The notes under the pieces were generated by a model. The model saw nothing but the letters and a program-made list of their open reading frames with translations, did not search any database and was not told the DNA's origin. Shown one piece after another: positions 285 to 60,919 of a stretch of 64,000 nucleotides of DNA. The DNA is from Mobula birostris (taxonomy: Eukaryota). The stretch lies in assembly GCF_030028105.1 (NCBI RefSeq), contig NC_092378.1:102351731-102415730 (forward strand), given 5' to 3'. A program made the translations under genes and the position numbers. Numbering within the stretch: the first letter of the stretch is position 1; each line of letters starts with the position of its first letter.

Positions 285-2876
285 GGTGGTACAACAACTC
301 TGAATCCCCACGTAAGACAACCTCGTCAAGAGTTAGTTCATCCCAGCACTGGTAAAAATAGAGGAAATGGAATTCCTGCTGCACTTTCCAGCCATTTTGG
401 GTTTCCATGTAGACCTGAGACAGTGTGGGGTCTTCTCTGGTTTCCCTCTTGATCATCTCTGCCATAATAGAGAGACTTTTGATTTGTATCAGAGGAGTGT
501 TCTCTTTTGTGAATTTTTCAGGCAATTCCTTTTCCAAAGATAAACAGGACAATCCACCAACATTTCTAAGATTACTTATCTTCTTGAATTCAATCTTGTA
601 TTTGTGTCCTCCAAGAAACAGAGCCCATCTCTGCATTCGTGCTGCTGTTGTTAGTGGAACACCCTTCTGTGGATTGAAAATGGACACCTGTGGTTGATGG
701 TCAGTAATGAGGGAAAACTCTCTCCCATAGAGTACTAGACGAAACGTTTAAAACTCATAAATCAGACTCAAGTCCACTCAGTCAATCAGTGCATGATTTT
801 TCTCTGCAGTGGTAAAGAAACGTGATGTAAAGCCAATGGGTATTCACTTCCATCACTCATGACATGTGACATGACTGCACATACACCATGAGGTGAGGCA
901 TCAGAAGCAAGCTTTACTAGACAATGTGGATCATAATTTGTGTGTACAGTGTGTGTTATCATCATATCCTTTGCCTTTTGGAAAGTCATCTCACACTGCT
1001 TTGTTCATTGCAATTTCTTTCCAATCTGTAGTCATGAGTTCAAGAAATGGAGCACAATAGCTAAGTTTGGTAGAAACTGTTATAGTAATTGACAAATCCT
1101 AAAAAAGACCACAACTTTGGCCATGGGGGCATCTACCACAGCTTGAGTTTTCTCAGCACATTTGTGAAATGCTGTGTGTCAATGGTGTGACCATAGTAAA
1201 TGATGCTTGGTTTAAAGAATTTACACTAGTTGTGTCATGTTCTGACCCATAATCTTCTAATCTTTTTAACAATATCTTGAGATTTTGGAGATGCTCCTTG
1301 TCTCCTTACTGGAATCAATGATGTCATTGGTATAATACTGAGTGCCTGGGCAGGCTTGTAATACCTGGTCCATTGCTTTCTGGCAGACTGCAGGTAAAGA
1401 TACTACTCCAAAAATAGGTTTATTATAGTGAATTCTTAGTGAGCGTTTATGGTGAGAAACACTTTGGACTCTTCTTCCATCTCTATCTGTAGGTAGGCCT
1501 CAGCTAAGATCACTTTGTTGAAGTGTTTCCCTCCAGCAAGGTTTACAAAGATATCCTCTCTCCTGGGAAGATTTTATTTTCAGTACTGGGTTGATGGTGA
1601 CATCAAAATCATCACAGGTCCTGACAAACCCATCCTTCTTGTCTACTGGGGCCACTGGCCCATGGGTTCGACTCAACTCAGCCTCCATACGTTCTAGCTC
1701 ACTGGCTACTTTATCGCGGATGGCATAAGGAACTGCTTTAGATTTGTAAAATGTCTGCATTTTCATTTAACACTATTTTACCCTTGAAATGTTTGAGTTT
1801 TCCAATGCCATTCTTGAACGCCGCTGTGGTATCATCCAATACCAGTCTTAATTCGCTTTCAGTTGTTTCTATTGCAGGGGTTGTGGCATGCAAATAGTGG
1901 ATGAATGTTCAATCAAGTTGTAGTTGTCTCATCCAATCACAGTCCCAATATACTGACCCTCCTATTTTCACTACATACAAGCCCAATGCAACTTGTGGTT
2001 GTTGTATTTCACTGTTACAACTGTCATTCCTGCAGGAGTTATCTATTCGCCGGTATAATTTCTGAGTTGGATATCTGCAGATATTAGTTCAATATATCTG
2101 AAATGCCATTCAAACTCATTTGTAGAATGACTGGAGCAGCCAAGTCAGTATTCAATTACATTTTAATTAATTTGCCATTCACATCCAGTGTAAGCTATAT
2201 TGCTTGTCTCTTTTTAGTTTTCACAACTGAAAATCTCAAGGCTACTCAGTCCTGGGCCACTCCCATCATTTTCAGATTTTTCATCAACAGCATGCAGGTT
2301 GTGCTGTTTTGGAAAATGCATCTTGAGATTTTATCTTTTCTTTGTGCGGTGCATGTATTTTTGTCTGCTTGACATGATCTTTGTCTGTGACCTACCTTAT
2401 CACATTTTCTGCAAGTTTTGCCTTTAAATCTGCATTGGTCTAGAGTATGTGAGCCCCTGCCACAATGGTAACACAATTTTTTCAGCCAGGCAGGTTTCTG
2501 TTTGGACGTCGCAATTTTGTTCACACTCGCGTTCATTCCTGACTGCAACTCAGTTGCATCTCTGGATGCTGTTTCTATTGATGCAGTGATTTCAACTGGT
2601 CTTTTGAATGTGTATTGTGTTTCAGTCAGGTCAGTGCATCATTAAGCCTATCACTGAACCAACAACGCTCAAATAATTTCTTCAATTTAGCCACATAAGC
2701 TGAAATGGGCACCCTTCCTCTTGATTCCGCTGATGAAACCTAAAGCAATCTGCAATCAACAAAGGTTTTAGTTCTAAATATTCTTGTATTATGTTCATTG
2801 TTCAGCAAAACTCATTTCGGCTGGTTTGGTTGGAGCAGTTAAACTTCTAAGCAAGCTGTATGCTTTTCAACCTATT
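285..2876 (-). mobile_element. Degenerate Ty3/Gypsy LTR retrotransposon internal region (gag C-terminus, protease, RT, RNase H, pre-integrase)
   Basis: Minus-strand fragments: zinc knuckles CYHCGRGSHTLDQC and CRKCDKVGH (2246-2548); RT-like VPYAIRDKVASELERME and KKDGFVRTCDDF (1500-1766); RNase H LASDASPHGVCAVMSH (786-989); AARMQRWALFL (280-687). Many stops and frameshifts. Confidence 0.9.
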
Positions 2877-4103
2877 CCAGAGGCCCAATCAGCAGCGGAG
2901 CAGAGTACTTTGATGAGGTTACTCGCAGGTCAACAAATCTTGTATAAAAGGAGAGGTTTGCGGGTGTTCAGACATTCCGGAGGCCCAATCAACGGTGGGA
3001 GCAGAGCACTGTGAAGTAAATAAAAGTACGGAAGGGGCAAGCGGGGCAGCCATTGTTGGGAGTAGGCCAGGGGTGTGAGTAGGAGTATCAGGTTTTGATG
3101 AGAAGAGGCTGAGGCCAAGAAAACAGGTTAGAAAGGTTAGTTACTCATTTTGTTATTGCTGATTTGGTCTTGGTTGCCTGTTGCACAGTGCAGGCAGAAT
3201 GGCAGATATGGCAGTGGAATGCTCCTCCTGTAGGATGTGGAAATTTGCGGAACCTCACGGTCTCCCTGATGACTCCACCTGGGCGAAGTGCAGACAACTC
3301 CAGCTCATGAAAGACTGCATTACGGAGCTGGAGCTGGTGCTGGATGAATTAAGGATCATCCAGGAGACAGAGCAATTGACAGACAAGACGTTTGAGCTGG
3401 TTACACCAGAGTGCAGAATTCAGGGAGTAGATGGTGAACACCAGGAGAGGTAAAGGCAGAAAGAAGTCAGTGCAGGGCCCCCCTGTGGTCATTCCCCTCA
3501 GCAACCTTTGGATACTGCTGAAGGGGGTGACCTATCTGGACAAGGCAACAGCAACCAGACCAACAGCACTGTAGTTGGCCCTGAGCCTTTGAGGGTAGGG
3601 TGAAGTCAGGCGGAGCAATAGTCATAGGGGACTCAACAGTTAAGGGGACAGATAAGGGATTCTGTGACAGCAAAAGAGGGGCCAGGATAGTGTGTTGCCT
3701 CCCAGGTGCTAGGGTCCAGGATGTTTCTGAGTGGTTGCAGAATATTCTTGAAAGGGAGGATGAGCAGCCGGAGGTCGTGGTACATATTGATACAAATAAC
3801 ACAGGCAGGAGAGGGGTAGAGGTTGTGCGCAGTAAGTTTCGGGAGTTAAGAAAGAGGCTGAAGAGCAGAACCACTGAGGTGGTAATCTCCGGATTACTCC
3901 CGGTGCCACAAGTTAGGGAAGGTCAGAACAGGAAAATAGCACAGACAAATGAGTGGCTGAAGAGATGGTGCATCGGGCAGGGTTTCAAGTTCTTGAATCG
4001 TTGGAATCTTTTCTGGAGAAGGGGTGACCTGTACAAGTGGGATGTGTTGCCCCTGAACTAGAGGGAAACCAATATCCTGGGAGGAAGGTTTGCTAATGTT
4101 ACT

Positions 4104-4525
4104 CAGTCAGTCAGTGGGTGCCGAGATTGGTGGCTATGCACCTCCATCTTCTTCGATCTTGCGACAGCACCGAGTACAGCCTCTCCTCCAGTCTGTTCTC
4201 GCTGGCTGCCTTGACACCGCCCGCCGCTGCCCCCGCCGAACTTGAGCCCAAGGCCGTGTCAGCCCCCAGCCGCGGCCTCTTCTTCGAGCTCGGCCCTTCC
4301 TTAGGCGGAGGCCTTGGGCAGGTCCAGGCACACGGTGCAGTGCCCAAGTTCATCATGTCTCTTCTAACTAAGTGCATAGCATACGATTTGAAGAGACGTG
4401 GTGAGGCTTTAATCTCTTCCACGGAAGATGGTTGTTGGCTCACAAGGAGCTCATCCGCCCTTTGTCAGCTCTTGTTTCTTTTAGTCCTGCTGGGTGTCCT
4501 CACACCCTCCTCTCCAGACTACATC
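4104..4525 (-). mobile_element. RTE-clade LINE 3' fragment with (CTGA)n tail, carrying a captured host-gene segment
   Basis: The minus strand gives a degenerate EMW.WRR.LR.P..TKRNKS...HLVRRDMMNL (4342-4525) and QDRRRWRCIATNLGTH* (4111-4163), followed by ctgactgactga. These resemble RTE ORF C-termini and short-repeat tails. Confidence 0.55.
4164..4340 (-). pseudogene. ZFTRAF1: Circularly permuted fragment of a ZFTRAF1/CYHR1-like coding sequence
   Basis: Minus 4340-4306 encodes [11 protein letters not shown]. Minus 4305-4164 encodes PKEGPSSKKRPRLG...[12 protein letters not shown]. I recall CYHR1/ZFTRAF1 as [24 protein letters not shown], so the two parts are swapped. Confidence 0.8.
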
Positions 4526-4930
4526 TATTGGGGAGGGTTTAAACTAGATTTGCAGGGGGTGGGAACCGAAGTGACGAGACAGAGGGGCAGTTGCGCACAA
4601 GTAGTGACAGCTTGTAAGGATTTGTGAGGAAGGATAGACAGGTGATAGAGCCAAGATGCACTCAGCCAGATGGTTTGAGATGTCTCTATTTTAATGCAAG
4701 GACTATCATAAACAAGGTGGATGAACTCTCCCCCACCAAAAATAGTCATGTCCTCATGACTTTGAGATAATTTATCACTATAACACTAAGTTTCAAAGGA
4801 ATTTCATGATGTCAGGACCTCCAATCCATGTGTGAATTGGCAGTGATATATCTCACTAAGGGAATAGTTGCAACACGCTGTTCCCTGGTGCGACATACGC
4901 CAGTCTATCTGAGGGTTTCCTCCAAGGTAT

Positions 4931-5467
4931 CCCACTTGGAGTACTTTGTTCAGTTCTGCTCACCTCAGTACAGGAAGGATGTGGCTACTATGGAGAGAGT
5001 GCAGAGAAGATTTACAAGGATGTTGCCTGGATTGGAGAGCATGCCTTACGAGAATAGGTTGAGTGAACTTGGTCTTTTCTCCTTGGAGTGACAGAGGATG
5101 AGAGGTGACCTGATAGAGGTGTATAAGATGATGAGAGGCATTGATTGTGTGGCTAGCCAGGGGCTTTCTTCCCAGGGCTGAAATGGCTAACACGAGGGGG
5201 CATCATTTTAAGGTGCTTGGAAGTAGGTACAGGGGGGATGTCAGAGCTAAGTTTTTCACACAGAGAGTAGTGGGTGCGTGGAATGCACTGCCAGCGGTGG
5301 TGGTAGAGGTGGATACAATAAGGTCTTTTAAGGTACATGGTATTTAGAAAAATAGAAGGCTATGTGGTGGAGAAATTCTAGGCAGCTTCTAGAGTAGATT
5401 ATATGGTCAGCACAACATTGTGGGCCGAAAGGCCTGTAATGTGCTGTAGATTTCTGTGTTCTATGTT
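4931..5467 (+). mobile_element. CR1 LINE 3' end with (TTCTATG)n-type tail
   Basis: HLEYFVQFCSPQYRKDVATMERVQRRFTRMLPGL; FFTQRVVGAWNALP; tail ttctgtgttctatgttcta. Confidence 0.92.
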
Positions 5468-5948
5468 CTATTGCACTCAACAACACTGGCACTCATTTTT
5501 CATTGGCTATTTCATTTGCTTCTAAATACTCTTCAATTTGTTCAGTTTACATCAGGTATCTGCCGTGCAAACAAGCGCATCTATCTTTTCAATGTATCCA
5601 GCCATTTCTGCTTTTTTATTTTATTATTATTGTTACCTGGTACTTATTATTTATGGCTGCTTATTAATTTTGTTCATTTTCTGCCTTTTTTTAAGCTTGA
5701 ATGTCTCTTTCCCCTTCTGAAGAATAATGTGCAGTGCTTTTTAAACCCTAAAGTATTTCTCCCCTTGAAAGAAAAACGTGCTGCACTTTTTTTTTAACTC
5801 TATCATTTCTCTCCCCTTTGAAAGAAGAATGTGCTGTGTTTTTTTTTCTTGAATGTCTCTCTCTGTCTCCCCTTCTGATAGAAAATGTGCTGCATTTCAA
5901 CTGGTAGGTAGTTGCCTTGGGTTTACTTTAAACCTTCCTCATCACCAC
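5468..5948 (-). mobile_element. Gypsy gag N-terminus, 5' leader with short repeats, and PBS (continuation of the 285-2876 element)
   Basis: The minus strand reads MAGYIEKIDA...EQIEEYLEANEIANEK*VPVLLSA, which joins IG*KAYSLLRSLTAPTKPAE below 2876. PBS-like TGGTGATGAGG lies next to the LTR. Three copies of a (GAATG)TCTCT..CCCCTT.TGA..AA.ATGTGC.G unit occur at about 5699-5897. Confidence 0.8.
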
Positions 5949-6214
5949 TGTTCTGTTTTGTAACTACAGATATTAATTGAAAGAAAAACACGGAAGCCAG
6001 GATATGTTTTGTACAGTCAGTTCTCCATCAGTAAGACCACAGAAGTGACATGGTGGCATAATGATATATGTTATTCAGTCACTTCTTACATGTAACCCAT
6101 AATGAATTATGTAAACAAACAAAAATGCTTAATCAAACAACATATTTACAATATTATTCAAATATTACTTATTACTTATTACTTACTTACTTATTAAATA
6201 TTGAATACACTACA
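5949..6214 (-). mobile_element. 5' LTR of the Gypsy element
   Basis: The minus strand begins TGTAGTGTATTC (6214) and ends ...CAGAACA (5949), immediately before the PBS. Confidence 0.75.
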
Positions 6215-12790: not shown

Positions 12791-14081
12791 ATGATATATG
12801 GCTTTGTACCCGTTACTCCCACCAGCTCTCCACCAAGAGAGTTTCTTGCCCTCATACCTGGATCTATTGTAGGGTAATTGGTGGAGACCCTTTTACTGTG
12901 ATTGGCCCATAATTCTGCCAATATGTCCTGCAGCTGTCAGGCGGCAAAGGTGATCTAGTGGGTCCTGAGTCTTTATCTGTCCACAGTCCAAACATTACTA
13001 GCTTTCTCCTTTTCCTTTCAAAGGGGGCTAATGCAATGTATCATATTTTGCCAGTGAGAACTGGAACCATTGCAGTGTAACTCCTTTCCTTCATGTTCAC
13101 ATTGGCTTGTTGGCATTGGTGCAGAGTTACAGAATGAAAGAAGCATACAGCACAGAAGCGGGCCCTCCCACCCCAGCTGATCTGTGCCCATGATGATCCG
13201 CATTTACCTGCATTACACCCCTTTCCCTCTACTCATTTTTACTCTAAATACCTGTCCAAATGCTGTAATTATATCTGCCTTTACCACCTCCCCTGGTCCT
13301 TCGGTCCAGGTCATCACCACCATCTTTGTGAACAACTTGCCCTCTGAATATGATGGTATTGGATTCCCTAAACTCAGAAGGAAGTTTGAAAGGAAATTCT
13401 AAGCCCCATTGATGTTTAGTAGCAAACTGTGGATACCCTCACTATAGGGAGATCATACTGTATCTGCCTACTCTTCAAAGAGTAACTTACTTCCCTGCCT
13501 TGTCTCTGTGGCGAGGTCCAGCTGCCAAAACCCATTATATGAGCAGTGGGTCCCCCCCTCACCCCGCTTTCTACCAAGGAGGAGATATGCCCAGCTAACA
13601 AAATAGTTTAAACAGTTTATTTTTAATGATAAACTTTACAATTAGAAAAATCATTCTGAACACACATTTAACACTCACAGTGGATTTCTGATTTATTAAA
13701 GATTTCCAAATTACCAAAGTTATGGTAAACTACCAATAAACTACAAATTTTTTAACTACAAAGAATTTCTAATCACGGGTACAATTCTTATGAGCTAAAA
13801 GCACATACATTCTGCTTCTTCTCTCTGTCACCCCATCTGTCTCCCATTCTTTGTGTCACTCCTAACAATCCTCATTGCTTTCTAACAATTAGACTGTTTG
13901 CTACTGGTTGACATTGTCTGCATGTGATCTTTTCAGATACCGTCACTGGGACAAAGTAATTTGCATATGGTCTAAAAGATTCTGGGGTCAGATATCTCAG
14001 ACATCCAAAACTGAGGCTGTGAGGACTGACTCTCTGAGTACTCAAAAATCCCAAATATTGATTGGCTTTGGCGATAACAGG

Positions 14082-17000
14082 ACGAGGTGAGGGAAGTTAC
14101 CTGTGAGGAATAAAAACAGGAAGTATGTCTGTGAGACCGGTGTTCTCTACTGGTTATCAAACGTGGAGGATTGGGAGACACCCAGCCTCCTGGAGGCCAT
14201 ATATGGGCAAGGTGCGTCAAGCTGCAGCTCCTTAGGGTCCGCGTTAGGGAACAGGAGCTGCAGCTCGACGACCTTCATCTGGTTAGTGAAAGTGAGGAGG
14301 TGATAGAGAGGAGCTATAGGCAAGTAGTCACACCAGGGCCTTGGGAGACAGATAAGTGGGTAACAATCAGGAGAGGGAAAGGCAAGAGTCAGATACTAGA
14401 GAGCACCCCTGTGGCTGTCCCCCTGAACAATACGTACTCCTGTTTGAGTACTGTTGGGGTGGGGGGGGACAGCCTACCTGTGGGAAGTGACAGTGGCTGT
14501 GCCTCTGGCACAGAGTCTGGCCCTGTGGCTCAGAAGGGTAGGGCAAGGAAGAAGGCAGCAGTAATAGGGGACCCTATATTTAGGGGGTCAGACAAGTGAT
14601 CCTGTGGACGCAGGAAAGAAACACAGATGGTAGTTTGCCTCCGGGATGTTTCTGATTGTGTCCACGATATCCTGAAGTGGGAGGGAGAACAGCCAGAGGT
14701 CGTAGTACATATTGGTACCAACGATATTGGTAGGAAAAGGGAGGAAGTCCAGTAAACAGAATACAGGGAGTTAGGAAGGAAGTTGAGAGGCAGGACCTCA
14801 AAGGTAGTAATCTTGGGATTACTGCCTGTGCCACATGACACTGAGTATAGGAATAGAGTGAGGTGGAGGATAAATGCGTGGCTGAGGGATTGGAGCAGGG
14901 GGCAGGGATTCAGATTTCTGGATCATTGGGACCTCATTTGGGGCAGGGATGACCTGTACAAAAAGGATGGGTTGCACTTGAATCCGAGGGGGACCAATAC
15001 CCTGGCAGGGAGGTTTGCTGAGGCTATCGGGGAGAGTTTAAACTAGGATTGCTGGGGGGTGGGAACCAAACTGAAGAGACGAAGAAAGGGGCAATTGGCT
15101 CACAAACAGAGAAAGCTTGGAGACAATGCGAGAGAGAGGATAGGCAGATGATAGAGAAGGGACTCGCTCAGACCGATGGTTTGAGATGTGTCTATTTTAA
15201 TGCAAGGAGTATTATGAACAAAGCGGATGAGCTTTGAGCGTGGATCAGTACTTGGAGCTATGATCTGGTGGCCATTACAGAGACTTGGATGGCTCAGGGG
15301 CAGGAATGGTTACTTCGAATGCCAGGCTTTAGAGGTTTCACAAAGGACAGGGAGGGAGGCAAAACTGAGTCTACTGAGTCTCTGTGGGTGGAAGTTAGAA
15401 ACAGGAAGGGCTTAATAACTCTACTGCTTGTTTTTTATAGGCCACCCAATAGTAACAGGGAGATCGAGGAGCCAATTGGGAGACAGATTCTGGAAAGCTG
15501 TAATAATAAGTGTTTTCGTGGTGGGAGATTTTAATTTCCCAAATATTGATTGGCATCTCCCTAGAGCAAGGGGTTTAGATGCTGTGAAGTTTGTTAGGTC
15601 TGTTCAGGAAGGTTTCCTGACACAATTTGTAGATAAGCCTACAAGAGGAGAGGCTGTGCTTGATCTGGTATTGGGAAATGAACCTGGTCAGGTGTCAGGT
15701 CTCTCAGTGGGACAGCATTTTGGAGATAGTGATCACAGTTCTGTCTCCTTTGGAGAGGGATAGGAACAGACAAGTTAGGGAAGCATTTAATTGGAGTAAG
15801 TGGAAATATGAGGCTATCAAGCAGGAACTTGGAAGTTTAAATTGGGAACAGTTGTTCTCAGGGAAATGTACGGCAGAAATGTGGCAAATATTCAGGGGAT
15901 ATTTGAATGGTGTTCTGCATAGGTACATTCCAAAGAGACAGGGAAAGGATGGTAGGGTACACGAACCATGGTGAACAAACACTGTTGAAAATCTAGTCAA
16001 GAAGAAAAGAAAAGCTTACGAAACGTTCAAAGAACTAGGTAATAATAGAGATCTAGAAGATTATAAGGCTAGCTAGAAGGAGCTTAAGAATGAAATTAGG
16101 AGAACCAGAAGGGGCCATGAGAAGACCCTAGCGAGCAGGAATAAAGAAAACACCAAGGCATTCTACGAGTATGTGAAGACCAAGAGGATAAGAAATGAGA
16201 GAATAGGACCAATCAAGTGTGACAGTGGAGAAGTGTGTATGGAAGCGGAAGAGATAACAGAGGTACTTAATGAATACTTTGCTTCAGTATTCACTATGGA
16301 AAAGGATCTTGGTGATTGTAAGGATGACTTACAACGGATTGAAAAGCTTGAGCATATAGATATTAAGAAAGAGGATGTGCTGGAGCTTTTGGAAAGCATC
16401 AAGTTGGTTAAGTGACCGGGATCAGACGAGATGTACCCAGGCTACTGTGGGAGGCAAGGGAGGAGATTGCTGAGCCTCTGGCAATGATCTTTGCATCATC
16501 AATGGGGATGGGAGAGGTTCTGGAGGATTGGGTGAGTTGCTGATGTTGTTCCATTATTCAAGAAAGGGAGTAATGATAGCCCAGGAAATTATAGACCAGT
16601 GAGTCTTACTTCAGTGGTTGGTAAGTTTAGGGAAAAGGTCTTGAGATTTATGAACATTTGGAGAAGCATAACATGATTAGGAATAGTCAGCATGGCTTTG
16701 TCAAAGGCAGATCATGCCTTACGAGCCTGATTGAATTTTTTGAGGATGTGATTAAACACGTTGATGAACGTAGAGTAGTAGATGTAGTGTATATGGATTT
16801 CAGCAAGGCATTTGATAAGGTACCCCATGCAAGGCTTATTGAGAAAGTAAGGAGGCATGGGATCCATGGGGACCTTGCTCTGTGGATCTCGAATTAGCTT
16901 GCTCACAGAAGGCAAAGACTGGTTGTAGACGGGTCATATTCTGCTTGGAGGTCAGTGACCAGTGGTGTGCCTCAGAGATCTGTACTGGGACCCCTTCTCT

Positions 17001-17964
17001 TAGTAATTTTTATAAATGATCTGAATGAGGAAGTGGAGGGATGGGTTAGTAAATTTGCTGATGACACATAGGTTGGGGGTAGTGTGGAGGGCTGTCATAG
17101 GTTACAGCAGGAGATAAATAGGATGCAAAACTCGGCTGAGAAGTGGCAGATGGAGTTCAACCCAGATAAGTGTGAGGTGGTTCATTTTGGTAGGTCAAAT
17201 ATGATGGCAGAATATAGGTATTAATGGTAAGACTCTTGGCAGTGTGGAGGATCAGAGGGATCCTGGGGTCCGAGTCCATAGGACACTCAAAACTGCTGCG
17301 CAGGTTGACTCTATGGTTAAGAAGGTATACGGTGCATTGGCCTTCATCGACCGTGGGATTGAGTTTAAGAGCTGAAAGGTAATGTTACAGCTATATAGGA
17401 CCCTGTTCAGAACCCACTTGGAGTACTGTGCTCAGTTCTGGTCGCCTCACAACAGGAAGGATGTGGAAACCATAGAAAGGGTGCAGAGGAGATTTACAAG
17501 GATGTTGCCTGGATTGGGGAGCATGCCTTATGAGAATACATTGAGTGAACTCAGCCTTTTCTCTTTTGAGCAGCGGAGGATGAGAGGTGACCTGATAGAG
17601 GTGTATAAGATGATGAGAAGCATTGACTGTGTGGATAGTCAGAGGTTTTTTTTCCCAGGGTTGAAATGGCTAACATGAGAGGGCACAGTTTTAAGGTGCT
17701 TGGAAGTAGGTACAGAGGAGATGGCAGGGTAAGTTTTTTACGCAGAGAGCGGTGAGTGTGTGGAATGGGCTGCCTGAGACAGTGGTGGAGGCGGATACAA
17801 TAGGGTCTCTTAAGAGACTCCTGGATAGGTATATGGAGCTTAGAAAAATAGAGGGGTATGGGTAACCCTAGGTTATTTCTAAAGTAAGTACATGTTCGGC
17901 ACAGTATTGTGGGCCGAAGGTCCTGTATTGTGTTGTAGGTTTTCTATGTTCCTATGTTTCTATG
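14082..17964 (+). mobile_element. Near full-length CR1 LINE (ORF1 esterase; ORF2 APE endonuclease and RT), inactivated
   Basis: AVIGDPIFRG, KDGLHLNPRG; CVYFNARSI, AITETW, FYRPPNS, VGDFNFP, LDLVL, DSDH; [31 protein letters not shown]; HLEYCAQFWSP; tail ttctatgttcctatgtttctatg. Many stops and frameshifts. Confidence 0.95.
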
Positions 17965-18279
17965 ATTGATCAACTATACCTGTGACCACGTTTGATGTGC
18001 TAAGTGAAAAAATCAGCTTGGTCTGCAGACTTCCATAACTCAGCCGCAATGGTGCAAATAACTTAGTCAGTATTGTCTGGTTTGATGCAAGCCAGTTAAC
18101 ATAACCCCACTGTCTTACGTTGGTTAAACATGGGCCTACAAGACCTCATTCTCTACTTGTTTGCAACAAGCTGAAGAAGGAATATTGCTTTGAAGTTTAA
18201 CTTTGTCACAAACAAATTTGATTCTTTGGAAAGGCTCTGCTAGAAAGCTGAAGTTCTCAGTAAGAATCTTGGGCCCTGG

Positions 18280-21042: not shown

Positions 21043-21431
21043 CAGTACTGTGCTCAGTTCTGGTCACCTCAGTACAGGAAGGATGTGGGTACTATAGAGA
21101 GAGTGCAGAGGAGATTTATAAGGATGTTGCCTGAATTAGAGAGCATGCCTTATGAGAATAGGTAGAGTGAACTTGGCCTCTTCTCCTTGGAATGACGGAG
21201 GATATGAGGCGACCTGATAGAGGTGTATAAGATGATGAGAGGCATTGATTGTGTGGAAAGCCGGAGGCTTTTTTCAAGGGCTGAAATGGCTAACAGGAGG
21301 GACTTAGTTTTAAGGTGCTTGGTGATTGGGTGATATTAGGCCGTTTCTAGAGTAGGTTACATGGTCGGCACAATATTGTGAGCCAAACAGCCTGTAATGT
21401 GCTGTAGATTTCTATGTTCTATGGTCTATGT
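21043..21431 (+). mobile_element. 5'-truncated CR1 3' end (same subfamily as 4931-5467 and 17400-17964)
   Basis: Direct nucleotide similarity to those copies; tail ttctatgttctatggtctatg. Confidence 0.9.
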
Positions 21432-36079: not shown

Positions 36080-36810
36080 AGAGATAGTACACTTTTAAGG
36101 ACAAGACCCTCAACAATGTAGACAAACAGAGGGATCTTTGGGTTTAAGTCCATAGCTCCCTGAGAGTGGCTACACAGGTTGATATGGTGATTATGAAGGC
36201 GTACAGCATGCTTGCCTTTATTAGTTGAAGAACTGATTTCAAGAGTCAGGAAGTTATACTGCAGCTTTATAAAACTCTACTTGGGTCACATGTGGAATAT
36301 TGCATACAGTCCTGGTCGTCCCATTACAGGGAGGCTATCGAGGACTTGGAGAAGGTGCAGAAGAGGTTTACCATGATGCTGTCTGGATTAGAGGGCATGT
36401 GCTATCATGAGAGGTTAGACAAATTTGGGTTGTTTTCTCTAGAGAGGTGAAGGTTAAGGGGAGACCTGACAGAGCTTATAAGATAATGAGAGGCATAGAT
36501 AAATAGACTGATAGTACTTTCTCCCCAGATTTGAAATGTCAAATACCAGAGGGCATGCACTTTGGATGAGAGGGGCAATCTCAAACGAGGTATGAGGGTG
36601 CTTGGAAGGCACTGCCTGGGGTGGTGGTAGAGGCAGATACCTTAGGGATTTTTAGGAGACATTAGATAGGCACATGAATTTGAGGAGAATGGAAGGATAT
36701 GCACGTAGTGTAGGCAGAAGAGATTAGTTTAGTTGACAATTTGATTACTTCTTTAATTGGTATGGCACAGCATCGTGGGCTGAAGGTTGCTCCTGTGTTG
36801 TATTGGTCTA
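36080..36810 (+). mobile_element. CR1 3' fragment
   Basis: LQLYKTLLGSHVEYCIQSWSSH...LEKVQKRFT; CR1 3' UTR-like end. Confidence 0.85.
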
Positions 36811-36867: not shown

Positions 36868-39800
36868 GATCATAAAACCTAGGAGCAGAATTAGGCCATT
36901 TAGCCCATCGAGTCGGCTCTGCCATTTCATCATGGCTGATCCCAGATCCCACTCAACCCCATACACCTGCTTTCTGGCCATATCCTTTGATGCTCTGACC
37001 AATCAGGAAGCTTATCACTTTTTGCTTTAAGTAAACCCACAGACTTGGCCTCAACCGCAATCTGTAGCAGAGCATTGCACAGATTCACTACTCTCTGGCT
37101 AAAAAAAAATCCCTCTTTACCTCTGTTCTAAAAGGTCGCCCCTGAATTCTGAGGCTGTGCCCTCTAGTTCTGGATACTCCCACCATAGGAAACATCCTCT
37201 CCACATCCACCATATCTAGTCTTTTCAACATTTGGTAGGTTTCAATGAGGTGCCCCCCCACATTCTTCTAAATTCCAGTGAGTACAGGCCCAAGGCTGCC
37301 AAACACTCCACATATGTTAACCTCTCTGAGATAGGGAAACCAAAACTGTTGACAATACCCCAAGTGCAGCCTGACTAGTGTTTTATTAGCATTGTCTCCC
37401 TGCTTTTATATTCTGTTCCCCTCAAAATAAATGCCAACATTGCATTTGCCTTCTTTGCCACAGACTCAACCTGTAAATTAACCTTGGAGTCTTGTATGAG
37501 GACTCCTAAGTCCCTTTGCACCTCTGATGTGTGAATTTTCTGCACATTTAGATAGTAGTCTGCACTATCGTTCCTTTTAGAAAAATGCATTATCATGTAT
37601 TTCCCAGTACTGTGTTCCATCTTCCACCTTTTTTTGTCCATTCTTCCAATTTGTCTAGGTCCTTCTGCAATCACATTGCTTCCTCAGCACTACCTACCCC
37701 TCCACCTATCTTCGTATCATCCACATACTTTGCACAAAACCATCAATTCCATTATCTAAATCATTGACAAGCAATGTGAAAAGTAGTGGTCCCAATACTG
37801 ACCTCTGAGGAACACCACTAGTCACTGGCAGCCAACCAGAAAAGGCCCCCTTTATTCCCACTCACTGCCTCCTGCCTGTCAGCCATTCCTCTATCCATGC
37901 CAGTATCTTTCCTGTAATGTCGTAGGATTTTATCTTGTTAAGCAGCCCCATGTATGGAACCTTATCAAATGCCTTCTGAAAATCCAAGTAAATGAATCCA
38001 CTGCCTCTCCTTTGTCCATTCTGCTTGTTACTTCCCCAAGAACTCTTAACAGATTTGTCAGGCAAGATTTCCCTTTACAGAAATCATGCTGACTTTGACT
38101 TATTTTGTTATTAGTCTCCAAGTACCCTGACTCCAACAATTTTCCAACCACTGAGGTTAGGCTAACTAGCCTATAATTTCCTTTCTTTTGCCTTCCTCCC
38201 ATCTGAAAGAGTAAAGTGACATTTGCAATATTCCAGTCTTGCGGCACCATGCCAGAATCAAGTGATTCTTGAAAGACCATGACCAATGCATCTGTTATCT
38301 CTTTAGCAATTTCTTTCAGGACTCTGGGATGTAGCCCAGTTGGTCTAGGTGACTTATCTATCTTAAGACCTTACAGTTTGCCTGGCACTTTTTCCTTTGT
38401 AATAGCAATGGCACTCAATCCTTCTCCCTGACACTCAAGGGCCTCTGGCACACTGCTAGTGTGCTTCCACAATGAAGGCTGGTGCAAAGTACCCATTAAG
38501 TTCACCTGCCATTTTTTGTCCCCATTACTACCTCACCAGCATGATTTTTCAGTGGTCTAATTTCAACTCTCACTTCCCTTTTACTCTTTATGTAACTGAA
38601 AAAAATTTATAGTATCCTTCTTTATATTATTAGCTAGTTTGTCCTCATATTTTGTCTTTTCCCCTCTTATAGCTTTTACTTAGTTGCCTTTTGTTGGATC
38701 TTGAAAGCTTCCCAATCATCCAACTTACCACTCACTTTTGCTACCTTATACGCCCTTTCCTTAGCTTTTATGCAATCCTTAACTTCCCTTGTCAGCGACA
38801 CTTGCCTACCCCAGTCACTTAAGAACATCTTCTGTAGGACATATATATCCTGTGTCTGGTGAACTAGTCCCAGAAACATCAGCCACGTTTGCTGTGCCGT
38901 CATCCCCACCAGTATCCTCCTCTAATCCAGCTGGCAAGCTCCTCTCTCATGCCTCTGTAATTCCCTTTATTCCATTGCAATACTGATTCATGTGACTTGT
39001 GCTTCTCCCTTTCAAATTGCAGTATGAATTCAATCATATTATGATCACTGTCTCCTAAGGGTTCCTTTATAGTAAGCTCCCTAATAAGATCTGGGTTATT
39101 ACCCAACACACAATCTAAAATAGCCTTTCCCTGAGTAGGCTCAAGCACAACTGCTCTAAAAAGCCATCTCATAGGCATTCAACAAATACCCTCTCTTGCG
39201 ATCCAACACCAACCTGATTTTCCAAATCCCCTTGCATATTGAAGTCCCCCATCACAATTGTGATATTATTCTTACTACATGCCTTTTCCAGCTCCTTTTG
39301 CAATATCAGCCCCACAACTTGGCTACTATTTGGAGGCCTATATATGATTCCAATTGTGTTTTTTTTTTCACCCTTGCAGTTTCTTAACTCCACCCACAAA
39401 GATTCAACATTTTCTGGCCCTATGTCACCTCTTCCTCAAGATGTGATTCCATTTCATACTAACAGAGCCTTCTTGCCCGCCCTTTCTATACAAAGTGTAT
39501 CCTTTGATGTTAAGCTCCCAACCATGGTCTTCTTTCAGCCATGACTCAGTGAAGTCCATAACATCATACTGACTAATCTCTAATTGCACCACGAGTTTGT
39601 CCGCCTTCTTCCGAATTGCTATGCGCATTTAAATACAGCACCTTCAGTCCTGCATTCTTCACCCTTTTGAACTTTGCCTCTGTGGTCCAGTTTAACTCTT
39701 TGCTCTGTCTGCTTTGGCTTGTCTTTAATGTTACACTCATCATCTACTTGTAAACATGCTGGCTCATCCCCAGCTCTATCATTCTGGTTCCCAACCCCCT

Positions 39801-40340
39801 ACCATATTAGTTTAAACCATGGCCAACAGCTCGAGTAAACTGCCTGCAAGAATATTGACCCCTCGGATTCAAGTGCAACCCATCCCTCTTTTACAGGTCA
39901 CACCTGCCCCAGCAGAGGTCCCAATTATTCAGAAATCTGAATCCCTGCTCTCTGCTCCAATTCATCAGCCACTCATTTATCTGCCACTTCATTCGATTCC
40001 TATCCTCACCGTCGCATGGCACAGGCAGCAATCCTGACATTACTAACCTTGAGGACCTGCTTCTCAGCTTCCTTATGTACTATGACCTCTGGCTGCTCAC
40101 CCTGGCTGTTCAGAAACATCACGGACACTGGCACCTGGGAGGCAAACTACCATCTGTGTTTCTTTTTCGTGTCCACAGAATCGCCTGTCTGACCCCCGAA
40201 CTACAAAGTCCCCTATTACTGCTACCATCCTCTCCAGTTCCCTACCCTTCTGAGCCACAGGGCCAGACACAGTGCCAGAGGCATGGCCACTGTTGCTTCC
40301 CCCAGGTAGGTTCCTCACCCCCCCCAACTGTACTCAAAAT
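36868..40340 (-). mobile_element. Near full-length CR1 LINE (ORF1 esterase to 3' tail), inactivated
   Basis: VAVIGDFVVRG and CLPGASVRDV (40097-40327); FTESWL, IYRPPNS, MGDFN, DSDHNMIEF; [25 protein letters not shown]. The 3' end is at about 36870. Confidence 0.93.
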
Positions 40341-49520: not shown

Positions 49521-50237
49521 TCTCAGATAAAGAGAATCATTTTAAGAGATCGTTTTAACTGAGTGGAAGTTAAAAAATTTGGAAACACTCAGTGGAACAG
49601 GCCACACGGTATGCAGACAGAAAAACAGAGTTAACTTTTCAAATCACAGACCCTTTGTCGTTCTCGTATGTGTTTTGTTAGTGTTTCAACTATAGTAATT
49701 TTAGAACAATGTATACATAAAATAATTTTTAAAAATGGGGCCGGGAATAAACATGAAGGAATCTGTTTGCAGTGGAGAATCACTTCCTCTCCACCTTCCC
49801 TTGAGAACCTCTTGGCTGGACCAGACACATCAAACTTCACTGCACAGCGGATCCGCTTCCATTCAATGAATTCACCGCACTGTCACAGCTGATACTCACA
49901 GGTTGGATGCAATGCTGGGTTTATTTTGAGCAATGCTCCTTCGGCAATGTTTCATCAATCTCTCCCTGGGCTGGTACAGCACAACTTCTGTGCAATGTGA
50001 AGTTCCCTCTACGCTGTTCCCAGAGTTCTCCCGGGGCAAATGTAGCTGGTTGATCAGTCTGAGCAGACTTTATCGCATGTTGACGTATTCATCCATGCAG
50101 GAGACTGATCCAGAGGCAGGCTGAAAGATACAGTAGAAACACAACATGCACAGATGCACTACAACAATTAGACATTGTTTATATTCATGCACACATACAT
50201 ACACAAACACATAACTTAGGAATCACACAGAGACATA

Positions 50238-52725
50238 AGGCTATAAGACATAGGAGCAGAATTAGGCCATTTAGCCCATCAAGTCTGCTCTGCCATGCAA
50301 TCATGATTGATTTATTATCCCTCTCAAACCCAGCATCTCCCCGTTACCTTTGACACCCTGACTAATCATGAACCTATGAACCTCTGCCTTAAATATACTC
50401 AATGGCTTGGCCTCCGCTGCCACCCGTGGCAACAAATTCCACAGTTTCACTACCCTCTGGCTACAGAAATTCCTGCTTATCCCTGTTCTGAACGGATGTC
50501 CCTCTATTCTGAGGCTGTCCTCGAGGCCTACACTCACACACTATGGGAAACATCCTCCACATCCACCCTATCTAGGCCTTTCATAAGATTTTCTCCTTAT
50601 TCTTATAAACTCCAGTGATTACAGGCCCCGGGGCATTAAACACTCTTCATACTTTAACCCTTTCATTCCTGGAATTATTCTCGTGAATGTCCACTGGATC
50701 TTCTCTAATGTCAATACAACTTTTCTTCGATAAGGGGTCCAAAACTGCTCACAATACCCTGTGCAGACTGACCACTGCCTTATCGAGCCTCAGCATTGCA
50801 TCCTTGCTATCATATTCTAGCCAAATCAAATGCTAACATTGCATTTGCCTTTTTTTACCACCAACTCAACCTACAAGTTAACCTTTAGGAAACTCTGTAC
50901 AATGACCCCCAAGTCCCTTTGCACCTCTGATTTTTGAATTTTCTCCTCATTTAGAAAATAGTCTACATCTTTGTTCTTCTACCAAAATGCATGGCCACCA
51001 CTTCCCTACACTACATTCCATTTGTCACTCCTTTGCCTATTCTCCCAGTTTGTCTATTTCCTTCTGCAGACTCTCTGCTCAACACTACCTGTCCCTCCTC
51101 CTGTCTTCATATTGTCCATAAATTTGACCACAAAGCCATCAATTCCATCAACTAAATAACTGACATGTAACATGAAAGGAAGCCATCCCAACACAGACCC
51201 CTGCAGAATACCACTAGTCACCAGCAGCCAGCTAGAAAAGGCCCCCTTTATTCCTACTCTTTGTCACTTGCCAGTCAGCCAATCTTCTATACACGCTAGT
51301 ACCTTTCCTGTAATACCATGGGTCCTTATCTTGTTAAGCATCTTCAGGTTTTGCATCTTGTCAAGGACCTTCTGAAAATCCAAGGAAATAACATCCATTA
51401 ACTCTCCATTGTCTATTCTATTTCTTCAAATAATTCCAACAGGTTTGTCAGGCAAGTATTTTCCTTAAGGAAACCATGCTGACTTTGGCTTGTATTGTTA
51501 TGTGCCTCCAAGCATCCTGAAAATGAACTTCAACATCTTTCTAACCACTGAAGTCAGGCTAACTGGGCTATAATTTCCTTTCTTCTGCTTCCCTCCCTTC
51601 TTAAAGAATAGAGTGACAATTGCAATTTTCCAGTCCTCTGGAACCATTCCAGAATCTAGTAATCCTTAAAAGATCATTACTAATCCCTCCACAATCTCGT
51701 CAGCTACCCATCTCCTTCAGAACCTGAGGAGTTGTCCATCTGGTCCAGGCAACTTATCTACCTTCTGACTTTTCAGCTTCCCAAGCATCATCTGCTTTGC
51801 AATAGCAACTGCTCTCACTTCTGCCCCCTGACACTTTTGAATTTCTGGCGTACTGCTGGTCTCTTCCATAGTGAAGACCGTTGCAAAATACTTATTACAT
51901 TTGTCCGTGATTTCCTTGTTCCCCATTACTACCTCTCCAGTGTCATTTTCCAGTGGATGAACATTCCACTCTCGTCTCCCTTTTGCTCTTTATATATCTG
52001 AAAAGGCTTTTGGTAACCTTGCTGATATTTTGGCTAGTTTACCTCTAAGTTTCATGAATTCTCTTCTTATGTCTTTTTTTAGTTGCCTTCCAATGGTTTT
52101 TAAAATCTCCCAATCCTCTAACTTCCCACTAATTATTGTATGCCCTCACTTTTCCTTTCTTTGACTTTCCTTTGCTCCCTTTAGAATACTTCTTCATCGT
52201 CAGAATGTATTTGCCCTGCACCTTCCAAATTGCCCCCAGAAACTCCTGCCATTGCTGCTCTGACATCATCCCTACTGATGGTCCCTTCCAATCAACTGGC
52301 CAGCTCCACTCTCATTCCTCTGTAATTCCCTTTACTCCGCTACAATACTGATACATCTGACTTTATCTTTTCCCTCTCAAGCTGCAGAGTGAACTTTATC
52401 ATATTATGGTCACTGTCTCCTAAGAGTTCCTTTACTTTAGGCTCCCTAATCAAATCTGGTTCATTACACAACACCCAATCTAGAATTGTCTTTCCCCTAG
52501 TGGGCTCAACCACAAGTTGCTCCAAAAAGCCATCTCGTAGTCATTCTATAAATTCCATCTTTTGGGATCCAGCACCAACCTGATTTTCCCAGTTTACCTG
52601 CATATTGAAATCCCCATTGTTACATTTCCCCTTTTGACATGCCTTTTCTATCTCTCTTTATAATTTGCATCTCACATCCTGTCTACTATTTGGAGGCCTG
52701 TATATAATTCCCATCAGGGTCTGTC
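50238..52725 (-). mobile_element. CR1 LINE ORF2 (endonuclease C-terminus to 3' tail)
   Basis: VVEPTRGKTILDWVLCNEPDLI, DSDHNMIKF, NKYFATVFT, PGPDG, FCSQRVVKLWNLLP. Confidence 0.92.
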
Positions 52726-54335: not shown

Positions 54336-55819
54336 ACCAATGCAAATGGACATCTTGCTAGATTTGAACACATGCTAGATTTCCAAGACTCTTCATCACC
54401 TTGGGAAATGAATCTGGGCTGACTGACATTATCCAAACCCTGGGGGCATCCTGTAAGAAACACAACTATGATTTTACCCTCTCCCAGGATTGTTCTAATG
54501 TGCTACAACAAACGAGGCCATGAGGCGACACCTCCAGAGATGACAATCCTACACTTAGCGTATACACCACACTTCCAAGCCAAATGTAGGTCGACTCTCC
54601 AGCAAACCCACCCTGTCTGGAGAGTTGTATAAATTGTTAGAAGCCCACAGAGGAGATGAATTATTGATTCTGTTCAAAAAGAGATAAAGAAATTGCTTAT
54701 CCTTGTTAAAAAAAAGATTGCTGGAGCTAATTAAGCTGTGTAAAAGTACCTTGAGAAATTATTTTAGTAGGTGACTAAATATAGATATTTTAAAATACAT
54801 GATGCATTGCTAGGGACCCGGCTCTCATACATCCTCTTAAATGGCAATCAACACAAATTAAATAAAAACATTGTAGAGTGCTGTAAACATATAATGTTAT
54901 TGTTTTCACTGCAAAGGTCCGTCACAGAATCACACTTTCTGTTATGCTCTGTCTGTTCCCATCTGTCACATACACTGCACCTGACCCTCCGTTCAGCAGC
55001 AGCACAGGAGGAGGGCCGTCATGGCCAGTCATAATTTTCTGCTTGTGCCACTGTTCTTTTGCTGCTCGTTTCCCTGCTCCCTCCCTTAGTCCTACAGCTT
55101 CCTCTATCACAAATTTACACTTAATCTTTCAACAGGAAGAATTTATTGCACCCAGTAAGTGAAAATAATTTGGGATAGGATGCTGCAGTGTGCCGGTAGG
55201 CAAAGGGCCTCATTTGCAATACAATTGTACCAGTAAGGAACTTAAGTTAGGTTTGTTCCTGATTGTACACTATGTACTTTACCAGCTCAGTCACTACGAA
55301 TATACATACTATCAATGCACACAGAAAATGAAAATCAGCTATTGGAAGTGGAGAACGCTGAGAATGGGCAGATCATGTCTGTGGAAAGAGAAATGAGTTA
55401 CTGTTTCAGGTCAGAGGTATTAACTCTGGTCCTCCCTCTGCAGATGCTGCCTGAACTGCTACAGGCAATGCTACCCAGAGTTAAAATGCAGTGGTAATGC
55501 CCCTCTGTTACTGATATTACTGATACTTCCCCTGTGTTGAGTTGAGCAATTCTGATTGGTTCACTCAGTTTCTGATGCATTTATTTACTGCTTTAGCTAC
55601 TGTACTAGTAATAAGTTTGAGAAAATAGATCTGGGTAACTCTGGGCCTATTGCCAGGGAGCCTATAAACGGCCAAGCCTGTAACTGATATAGTGATATTG
55701 GCTGTGCTTTAAGAATGGCCAGAACAGCCTATGGAACTATTCTTAATGTCTGCGGCTGGTGGACGGGGAGATAAACTATTGGATTGTGTTCTGAAGTGTC
55801 TGTTCTTTTTTGCCTTTAG

Positions 55820-56462
55820 GAGTTTGATGCCGAAGACATTGGACGGACAGCTCACCATGGAGAAAACACCCAGTTACTTTGTCACCAGAGAAGCACCAAA
55901 ACGAATCTTCTCCATGGCAAAGGGCACCAAGCTGGTGGTGGTGGTCCGGAACCCAGTAACCAGAGCCATTTCAGACTACACCCAGACACTGTCCAAGAAA
56001 CCTGAGATTCCAACCTTTGAGGTTCTGGCCTTCAAGAACAGGACCCTGGGCCTGATCGATGCCTCTTGGAGTGCCATCCGCATTGGGATCTATGCCTTAC
56101 ACCTGGAGAACTGGCTCCAGTTCTTTCCCCTTTCCCAGATCCATTTCGTCAGCGGGGAGAGGCTCATCATTGACCCGGCTGGAGAGATGGGAAAAGTTCA
56201 GGACTTCTTGGGCCTCAAGAGGATCGTCACAGACAAGCATTTTTACTTTAACAAAACCAAGGGATTTCCGTGCCTGAAGAAACCTGAAGACAGCAGCCTG
56301 CCAAGATGCCTCGGGAAATCCAAGGGGAGAACTCATCCAAAAATAGATCCTGATGTAATCCATAGACTGCGAAAGTTTTACAGACCTTTCAACATCATGT
56401 TCCATCAGATTACAGGAGAAGACTTTGATTGGGAAAAGGATGAAAATCAAGAAATTATTTGA
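55820..56462 (+). CDS. HS3ST4: Terminal coding exon of heparan sulfate glucosamine 3-O-sulfotransferase 4 (sulfotransferase domain C-terminal part)
   Basis: Acceptor tgttcttttttgcctttAG|G at 55818-55820 (phase 2). The open frame runs (R)[20 protein letters not shown]...[13 protein letters not shown] (3'-PB motif)...[23 protein letters not shown]...* with stop at 56460-56462. [39 protein letters not shown] and [13 protein letters not shown] match my recollection of HS3ST4 rather than HS3ST2 or HS3ST3. Confidence 0.92.
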
Positions 56463-59425: not shown

Positions 59426-60919
59426 CTTGGAGGACCTGTGCGATTTCCTGCAGCCATGCGCAGATCAGATGCCATGTTACGATGCAATGCATATGGATAT
59501 GATGTTTTATGTGGTTCCTTAGGAGATATTTCTGTAATTCAGTAAGGCCACAGTTGAGCCCACATGATGCAGCTTGAGAGCTTTCTTAATACAGGTATCA
59601 TTGCAGAAGGCTTTTATGGAGAGGCAGCTGGAAAGAATGATTACAGGAATCTGCTCTTTGCTTGGACTTTGTGTATTCTCTTCTCTGCAGTCATATGGAT
59701 TTCTAATGGGTGCTCCTGTCTTCTTTCACTTCCTACAGATGTACTCACAGGATTAACTAAGTTGCCTGTGGATGTAGGTCAATAGCAAACCAACCAAGGG
59801 GGAGTGTTGGGGCATGTGATAGAGAATGAGGCGCAGGGCTGTAAAGATTGATGGCAGGACTGATGGGATCTGGATGGAGCTGGTATCAGTCTGATGGATC
59901 AAGTAGCCACCTTCTGAGTCATTTTTACAAGGTTTATCTAGGGCAGCATTGGCAGGTTGGATGACGGCATCAAGATAATGAGGGTGGGTGTGGATCCCAT
60001 GAACAGGCAACAGAACAGGGGTACCTACCTGTGGATAATGCTGGGAAAGGATGTGAAAATGAAGACAGGGAGATGAATTGGGATGAAGAGCAATGGACTG
60101 GGAAGAGAAGCCATTTCTGAATTTGTGCTTACACAACTGAGGGTGAAGCCATTCATGTGAGTCTGTGTGAAAGGGGAGAATTCACAGTGACTCCTCCACT
60201 CCCAGTGTAAGGAAAAGAACAAGCTTGGCTGATGCCTTCTCAGATTAAAGTCTTGTTTAATAACAGTTTTTGTTATCATTTGTCCCGTGTAGAATGGAAC
60301 CATACTAGTAAATAGGACCGTCCTATACTGAGCAACACCTTCAGAAAGTCCTCTCTCAGAGTTCAGATCCCTCTGTAGACTCTGTTTTCTTTTACTCAAT
60401 ATCTCATGGTACAAGAGTCTCTCAGAAGACAGGCTGGAGGTAATTGAGAATAATTCTTTATGTGATTCTAATTTCCCTCTGGTAATTGCTTCCATTGTCT
60501 GGCATGAGCTGCTGATTTGTCCACCTCTGCCATCGATTGAAGTGTGTGCATTAATTGAAGGCCTGTGAATAAGCTTTTTTGTATTTATATGAGGTGAACG
60601 ATTGATCCTGAAGTATGTCTACCTTTTACAATCATGCTACGCTTCAGTGACTACTCTTCTTGATCTAATGCAGTCAAAAATAAGTTTTGTTTGCACTCTT
60701 GATCTATAAGGCAATTTAAACCAGGGAAACGTCCCTTAAGCATGCATACCGTCTGCTGCAGATGTACAGTACTGCAGCATTGCTGCAACTTACCAAATTT
60801 TAGAGTCAGGACCTTCAGCCCAAAGGGTCCATGCTGATCAAAATTCCCATCCAAACTATTTGTCTGTATTTGGCCAATATCCCTCTGAACCTTGGCCAAG
60901 TGTCTTTTAAATGTCCTTT

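What the first reader, a model, noticed from the sequence alone, without database searches (positions are those of the whole stretch)
4164..4340. Circularly permuted ~177-bp piece of a ZFTRAF1/CYHR1 coding exon: footprint of a small circular template
Seen: the minus strand reads c-TGC ACC GTG TGC CTG GAC CTG CCC AAG GCC TCC g ([11 protein letters not shown]). This is fused directly to cct AAG GAA GGG CCG...GAG AAC AGA CTG GAG GAG AGG CTG TAC TCG GTG CTG t (PKEGPSSKKRPRL...[12 protein letters not shown]). Knowledge: CYHR1/ZFTRAF1 reads [24 protein letters not shown], so the native order is A-B and here it is B-A. The outer ends (CTG T and C TGC) would abut in the source gene with only one base (G) missing. 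Inference: a ~178-nt circle (microDNA/eccDNA or a non-canonical circular RNA) was closed mid-exon, possibly through CCG microhomology. It was then copied or integrated for exactly one round. Size, high GC and exonic origin fit microDNA. Retained CpGs suggest it is recent or unmethylated.
Basis: partly seen in the sequence, partly recalled or inferred. Interest (0 to 1): 0.9.

Follow-up and report, generated by a model that had tools for sequence, protein, structure and literature searches.

The report
Order-swapped host exon piece inside retroposon
A 177-base piece of a host zinc-finger gene with its two halves in swapped order is really there, but it sits inside a larger 430-base insert in an old jumping gene and most likely arrived as cargo of a small retroposon, not as a free DNA circle.

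Summary
The minus strand 4340..4164 reads an 11-codon RING-start peptide joined to a 47-codon open frame. The piece does not lie naked in its target. It is the middle of a ~430-base insert (4095-4524) with 184 and 69 more foreign bases on its two sides. That insert interrupts the spacer between ORF1 and ORF2 of an old esterase-type LINE. Both other, diverged copies of this LINE in the window lack it.

This scan has met the same swapped piece before on other DNA of this genome. Twelve notes hold the gene's names, and three follow-ups read it as inherited cargo of an RTE-like retroposon. Those notes are leads; I could not test them. After that I did not look for the gene itself, so the native A-B order rests on recall and on those notes.

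Best reading: a 5'-truncated retroposon copy. The swap arose once, in the family's founder, from a once-cut small circle or from two template jumps. The circle idea is neither shown nor excluded. Integration of a circle at this site is not supported.

The parts
3507..4094 (+). Host LINE copy, 5' part. It holds ORF1 (3600-4061) with a GDSL-lipase/OSK-type esterase domain.
   Evidence: 3715-4094 matches 14640-15019 (69.7%), and 3507-3730 and 3851-4090 match 40338-39837 (about 69%). Lipase_GDSL_2 E 1.9e-07 (32.2 bits, just under the 32.9 cut-off) and OSK E 1.6e-04. CpG o/e 0.27.
4095..4163 (-). Part Y: the 3' end of the insert as read on the minus strand, 69 bases. It ends in a short ACTG-type repeat followed by about 10 more bases. 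Its origin is not assigned here; earlier readers called it an RTE-like tip.
   Evidence: Absent from both other LINE copies. No DNA or translated match elsewhere in the window. No Rfam family. Sequence read.
4164..4340 (-). The order-swapped coding piece. Read 5'->3' on the minus strand, a short half (11 codons, start of a RING finger) is joined directly to a long half (47 codons, basic N-terminal region).
   Evidence: reading and frames. (GC 68.4%, CpG o/e 0.70). The assignment to ZFTRAF1/CYHR1 is recalled and was not tested.
4341..4524 (-). Part X: the 5' part of the insert as read on the minus strand, 184 bases. It has stops in all three minus-strand frames. An 11-base match to the 'ADEL' motif at the endonuclease start of another LINE copy is at chance level.
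   Evidence: Absent from both other LINE copies; best matches elsewhere in the window are 11-16 bases, E 0.5-2.1; no significant translated match; no Rfam family (one hit at E 0.36, 13.4 bits against a gathering score of 40).
4525..4760 (+). Host LINE copy resumes. The spacer runs into the start of ORF2 (endonuclease N-terminus, 'NAR.I.NK.DEL'-like, near 4695-4735).
   Evidence: 4525-4727 matches 15024-15233 (77.1%). Alignments. CpG o/e 0.25. The endonuclease motif is my reading, from recalled knowledge of LINE ORF2 starts.

Best explanation
Bases 4095-4524 are one copy, probably 5'-truncated, of a small non-autonomous retroposon. It lies on the minus strand and inserted into the ORF1-ORF2 spacer of an older esterase-type LINE. 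Earlier readers called the element RTE-like. It consists of a 5' part X, the order-swapped host exon piece, and a 69-base 3' part Y. The swap was not made at this site. It was made once, when the family's founder formed, and every copy inherits it. For that founding event I favour a reverse transcriptase that jumps between templates only at their ends. Such an enzyme would copy the 3' part Y, then a ~178-nt linear RNA from end to end, then X. That ~178-nt RNA was the permuted form of the exon segment, that is, a small circle cut once. Equivalently, a small DNA circle was cut once and ligated into a broken element copy. Shown here: the anatomy, and the absence of the insert from paralogous LINE copies. 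Taken from earlier notes: that there are many copies. Inferred: the founding mechanism.
For: (1): similarity to the other LINE copies stops at 4094 (or 4090) and resumes at 4525; copy 14640-15233 has 5 bases between the two flanks, and copy 40338-39300 has about 17. So 2 of 2 comparable copies lack the ~430 bases. (2) The swapped piece takes up only 177 of those ~430 bases. X (184) and Y (69) are also foreign to the LINE and match nothing else in the window. The unit that entered is therefore composite. (3) CpG o/e is 0.70 in the piece and 0.68 in Y, against 0.25-0.27 in the LINE flanks and 0.26 window-wide. That fits an insert younger than its host. (4) Leads, not tested here. 12 earlier notes name the same swapped piece at other places in this genome. 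Three follow-ups read it as retroposon cargo, one in a 627-base TSD-flanked copy. Noted stretch sizes of 166, 177/178, 233, 286, 422 and 627 fit a common 3' end with variable 5' truncation; for example 178+69=247 and 166+69=235. (5) Mechanism. [quoted passage not shown] LINE RTs fuse two or three transcripts into chimeric retroelements (abstract of PMC2104539). (6) In a local circular fold, a 5-bp stem bridges the inner joint. The two ends of the native segment could therefore lie close together.
Against: No second copy of the insert is in this window, so I did not show that there are many copies. No target-site duplication of 7 bases or more stands at the insert's ends (best shared words are 6 bases and are not at the ends). 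The two reference LINE copies are only 69-77% like this one, so the boundaries are good to about 5 bases. A spacer segment specific to one LINE subfamily cannot be ruled out from the window alone. X and Y were not shown to be RTE-derived, because no repeat library is at hand. The native order of the two halves was not tool-tested. R2 RT is not RTE RT, and a strand-displacing RT on a true circle could go round more than once.
Confidence: 0.65

Rival explanations
1. A free ~178-bp DNA circle (microDNA/eccDNA) or a circular RNA copy from the host exon integrated directly at this site, in one turn.
For: The B-A order with near-abutting outer ends. [quoted passage not shown]
Against: The piece is not flanked by the target. 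184 and 69 further bases, foreign to the LINE, lie between it and the interrupted LINE sequence. Earlier notes place the same piece at many loci (not tested). 177-178 bp is just under the 200-400 bp range quoted.
Confidence: 0.04
2. A one-off patchwork made at this site. Either a double-strand break in the LINE copy was repaired with filler from several sources, or one target-primed reverse transcription event switched among several RNAs. In that case X, the piece and Y were first joined here.
For: The insert is a mosaic of at least three parts with no match to one another or to the rest of the window. No clear TSD. LINE RTs are known to make bi- and tripartite chimeras (abstract of PMC2104539).
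Against: Earlier notes describe the same sandwich elsewhere, including a TSD-flanked 627-base copy (not tested). If this locus were the founder, it should be full length, not shorter than that copy.
Confidence: 0.1
3. The 430 bases are not an insertion. They are a spacer segment proper to this LINE's own subfamily, which the two diverged copies in the window never had.
For: The reference copies are only 69-77% identical. Their spacers differ from each other too, at 5 against about 17 bases. No TSD.
Against: The segment is antisense to the LINE. Its CpG o/e (0.70 in the piece) is far above that of the LINE flanks (0.25-0.27). Earlier notes report the piece in unrelated settings, such as a gene intron and duplicated segments (not tested).
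Confidence: 0.08
4. On the origin of the swap only: no covalent circle ever existed. The RT entered a linear host mRNA inside the exon, copied the long half to a stall or 5' end, and jumped back to a point downstream on the same RNA. It then copied the short half until it met its own cDNA-RNA hybrid, and left. Alternatively the source carried a tandem duplication.
For: [quoted passage not shown] A 5-bp stem bridges the inner joint, and the stretch folds at z = -3.1 against 200 mononucleotide shuffles. Earlier notes say both halves come from the first coding exon, which has no upstream acceptor for back-splicing (not tested).
Against: It needs an internal entry and an exit within a base or two of each other. 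R2-type RT is reported not to jump when paused mid-template. A linearised circle explains the exact unit length with fewer steps.
Confidence: 0.3
5. Assembly chimera: the swapped order is an artefact of assembly.
For: The best DNA run holds only 0.54 of the sampled words of 3900-4720.
Against: The joints are clean. The flanks continue as one LINE copy. The same order is noted at many other places in the assembly (not tested).
Confidence: 0.02

Closest known systems
Chimeric retroelements made by LINE reverse-transcriptase template switching (U6/L1 chimeras; bi- and tripartite chimeras of Magnaporthe and mammals)
   Same: Several unrelated transcripts are fused head to tail into one retro-inserted unit. 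Host mRNA 5' exons are frequent partners: 15 of 17 L1/mRNA chimeras map to transcript starts (passages of PMC13174262; abstract of PMC2104539).
   Different: Here the host part is order-swapped within itself, which those papers do not describe. The word 'circular' occurs 0 times in PMC13174262. No poly(A) and no clear TSD at this copy. According to earlier notes the chimera went on to multiply as a family.
circRNA-derived pseudogenes (Dong et al. 2016, PMC4897178)
   Same: A non-colinear order of host coding sequence sits in genomic DNA. There are many copies from one source (33 high-confidence circRFWD2 copies), few A's at the 3' end, and an association with retrotransposon sequence (whole text).
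   Different: There the joint is a back-splice junction between whole exons (exon 6 to exon 2). Canonical back-splicing would therefore not make it. This was not tested here.
microDNA / small eccDNA
   Same: Small, GC-rich, from exons, 5' ends of genes and CpG islands (passages of PMC6511871). The piece is 177-178 bases with 68.4% GC.
   Different: Germline reintegration of a microDNA and its later spread inside a retroposon did not turn up in my searches. The size lies just under the quoted 200-400 bp. No circle was observed.
LINE-dependent non-autonomous retroposons (SINE-like elements that share a partner LINE's 3' end)
   Same: Short, non-coding, variably 5'-truncated and dispersed, with the 3' end presumably recognised by a partner LINE. 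These properties are my recalled knowledge of the class. Truncation and dispersal for this element come from earlier notes.
   Different: No tRNA, 5S or 7SL head was found beside the piece. The body carries a host exon piece. The partner LINE was not identified here.

Membership tests
LINE-mobilised non-autonomous retroposon | Many dispersed copies that share the same internal junctions and the same 3' end | not testable with these tools
The only sign is earlier notes: 12 hold the gene names. These are leads, not support.
LINE-mobilised non-autonomous retroposon | Presence or absence against an empty (paralogous) site, with clean boundaries | tested here: met
   2 of 2 other copies of the host LINE lack 4095-4524. 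The boundaries are good to about 5 bases, because those copies are only 69-77% identical.
LINE-mobilised non-autonomous retroposon | Target-site duplication flanking the insert | tested here: not met
   no direct repeat of 7 bases or more between the two boundary zones. The longest shared words are 6 bases and are not at the ends. Decay of the old target, or a small target deletion, could hide one.
LINE-mobilised non-autonomous retroposon | 3' end homologous to that of a partner LINE (said to be RTE) | not tested
   No repeat library at hand. Y matches nothing else in the window.
circRNA-derived pseudogene | Non-colinear joint that coincides with a back-splice (exon end to exon start) junction | not tested
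Earlier notes put both halves in the first coding exon, which would fail this feature.
circRNA-derived pseudogene | Host sequence confined to the circle's content, with no sequence from outside it | tested here: inconclusive
   The open frames end at the piece's borders. Without the source gene I cannot say whether X or Y holds further host-gene sequence.
microDNA-derived insertion | Size 200-400 bp, GC-rich, from an exon, 5'UTR or CpG island | tested here: inconclusive
   177-178 bases, just under the quoted range. GC 68.4%, CpG o/e 0.70. Features quoted from PMC6511871. The origin in a CpG island was not seen.
microDNA-derived insertion | The circle's content lies directly in the target, with nothing else inserted | tested here: not met
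   184 and 69 further foreign bases flank the piece inside the insert.
Template-switch chimeric retroelement | Parts from different transcripts fused in the same orientation, the whole flanked by one TSD, with the 3' part from a LINE or SINE | tested here: inconclusive
   The mosaic of three parts is shown. The orientation of X and Y is unknown. No TSD.

The most novel reading that the evidence does not exclude
A small circle, about 178 nt, was closed in the middle of a host gene's first coding exon, either as RNA without back-splicing or as a microDNA. It was cut once and built into a non-LTR retroposon, and the retroposon then multiplied in the germline. The family would then be a multi-copy fossil showing that mid-exon circles of nucleosome size can re-enter a vertebrate germline genome. 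The exact one-unit length would record end-to-end copying by a template-jumping reverse transcriptase.
Probability: 0.25. Interest if true: 0.7.

Novelty: new variant of a known kind. Interest (0 to 1): 0.4.

Why it matters
If the swap does record a circle, this family is a rare germline trace of a small mid-exon circle re-entering chromosomes. It would have been amplified by a retroposon, so the junctions can be read many times over and the event can be dated from the divergence of the copies. [quoted passage not shown]

For this locus alone the result is modest. It is one more, probably truncated, copy of an element that the scan has already met elsewhere in this genome. It says nothing new about circle integration at this site.

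Tried and rejected
- **Second copy in the window.** blastn with word 11 on 2501-6000, blastn-short with word 7 on X, Y and the long half, and tblastx on X and Y found none. Only chance-level matches appeared.
- **TSD search.** One search found none of 7 bases or more.
- **Rfam beside the piece.** Searches found no family, so there is no tRNA, 5S or snRNA part.
- **Findings search by sequence.** X and Y plus the long half gave blanks.
- **Solved structures.** The long half's translation gave 0 hits at E up to 10.
- **Papers.** 'CYHR1' with 'retroposon' gave 0 papers. Searches on permuted or template-switch pseudogenes, RTE/SINE exon capture, manta ray genome repeats, microDNA reintegration, non-colinear retrocopies and the domains of the protein listed no report of an order-swapped exon piece inside a retroposon. 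I saw listings only for these, apart from the papers named in the report. They may hold comparable cases.
- **Rejected readings.** Assembly artefact: the LINE is continuous across the insert and the same order is noted elsewhere. Direct circle integration: the extra flanks speak against it.
- **Not done.** I did not search the large protein sets with the long half to fetch the native protein. I judged that too close to looking for the same protein by a flank. The native order therefore stayed unchecked.
- **First hand-in.** This is the same report with that field put in its place.

Full report
**What is in the sequence.** Read on the minus strand, 4340..4164 is a 177-base GC-rich stretch. One frame gives an 11-residue peptide that looks like the first Cys-x2-Cys of a RING finger, and it meets a stop just past the joint. 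The frame shifted by one base gives 47 open codons, from a basic N-terminal-like region to ...[12 protein letters not shown].

- The two frames are out of register at the inner joint. They come into register across the outer ends if one base is missing.
- GC is 68.4% and CpG o/e is 0.70, against 0.26 for the window.

**Why the gene identity stayed unchecked.** I asked look-up of sequencing runs for holders of 3900-4720. The best was coded DNA run X1 with 0.54 of the words. Several other coded organisms held 0.09-0.22. No holder is on record as RNA, though four small-share rows were guessed to be RNA.

I then asked read laying to lay two DNA runs and two possible RNA runs. I also did not look for the gene or protein in read, contig or sample collections.

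I further held back from searching the large protein sets with the long half. A search of solved structures with the long half alone gave nothing.

**The setting.** A self-comparison of 2501-6000 against the window shows two matches:

- 3715-4094 matches 14640-15019 (69.7%), and 4525-4727 matches 15024-15233 (77.1%).
- A third copy on the other strand matches 3507-3730 and 3851-4090.

In pairwise alignments the second copy has 5 bases where this locus has 4095-4524. The third copy has about 17.

The repeat is a LINE. ORF 3600-4061 carries a GDSL-lipase/OSK-type esterase domain (Lipase_GDSL_2 E 1.9e-07, just under Pfam's cut-off). Downstream of the insert, the sequence runs into what I read as the start of an endonuclease domain.

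So about 430 bases interrupt the ORF1-ORF2 spacer of an old LINE copy. The LINE flanks have CpG o/e of 0.25-0.27.

**The insert is composite.** The swapped piece fills only 177 of the ~430 bases. Part X (4341-4524, 184 bases) lies on one side and part Y (4095-4163, 69 bases) on the other.

- Y ends on the minus strand in a short ACTG-type repeat plus about ten bases.
- Neither X nor Y matches anything else in the window as DNA or in translation.
- Neither matches an Rfam family.
- I found no target-site duplication of 7 bases or more.

This anatomy alone argues against a naked 178-base circle landing here. Whatever entered was a ~430-base mosaic.

**What the scan had seen before.** These are leads, not tested here.

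- Twelve notes hold the gene's names, and those listed are from other places in the same genome. The stretch sizes listed include 166, 177, 178, 233, 286 and 627 letters.
- Three follow-ups concluded that the swap is real and that it travels as cargo of an RTE-like retroposon. One was in a TSD-flanked 627-base copy, and one named the genome as manta ray.
- These notes changed my reading. Before them I favoured a one-off patchwork.
- The sizes fit my anatomy if all copies share the 69-base 3' part and are cut short at different 5' points: 166+69=235 and 178+69=247. That is my inference.
- Most notes give 178 bases. Here the base next to the short half follows a C and could be a decayed CpG, which would make this copy 178 and a perfect permutation. 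That too is inference.

**How the swap most likely arose.** Non-LTR reverse transcriptases fuse separate transcripts into one cDNA (abstract of PMC2104539). L1 chimeras with mRNAs mostly take transcript starts (passages of PMC13174262).

If the enzyme that built the founder behaved likewise, the middle segment is an end-to-end copy of one ~178-nt linear molecule in permuted order. The simplest source of such a molecule is a circle cut once. A DNA route gives the same product: a small GC-rich exon-derived circle of the microDNA kind (passages of PMC6511871) is cut once and ligated into a broken element copy.

The rival that needs no covalent circle is a double jump on one structured linear mRNA. 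[quoted passage not shown] In a local fold a 5-bp stem bridges the inner joint, and the stretch is more stable than shuffles (z -3.1).

I cannot choose between these routes without the source gene and the other copies.

**Comparison with what is known.** The nearest described things are circRNA-derived pseudogenes, LINE template-switch chimeras and microDNA. Each shares something with this element. None describes an order-swapped, mid-exon piece carried and multiplied by a retroposon. My paper searches listed no such report. Supplementary tables were closed.

**Verdict.**

- The circle idea is a fair but unproven account of the founding event.
- The implied integration of a circle at this site is not supported.
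- This locus is most likely an ordinary, probably 5'-truncated copy of an unusual retroposon family that the scan has already met on other DNA of this genome.

Noticed in passing
window 55731-56462 (+): An ORF of 243 aa with a strong sulfotransferase domain (Sulfotransfer_1 E 7.7e-29). It is probably a coding exon of a host sulfotransferase gene.
   Followed up: no
window 60831-61589 (+), with overlapping ORFs to 62274: A reverse-transcriptase domain (RVT_1 E 8.4e-28) of another LINE copy. Its clade was not determined. X and Y do not match it.
   Followed up: partly
window 4931-5471; 17413-17963; 21044-21429; 36307-36662: A second repeat family just beyond the host LINE, with copies 69-89% alike. 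In two places it lies next to copies of the esterase-type LINE.
   Followed up: no
window 4118-4627 (+): A 169-aa ORF (GTG start) runs antisense through the whole insert, including the GC-rich piece. It is probably chance in GC-rich DNA.
   Followed up: no
window 14001-18000; 38001-40000; 50001-52000: Strong local GC skew: +0.33 to +0.36 at 14-18 kb, and -0.34 and -0.33 in the other two stretches. They are probably strand-biased repeats.
   Followed up: no
If real, permuted one-unit copies may be a recurring product of retroelement enzymes in this genome.
   Followed up: no
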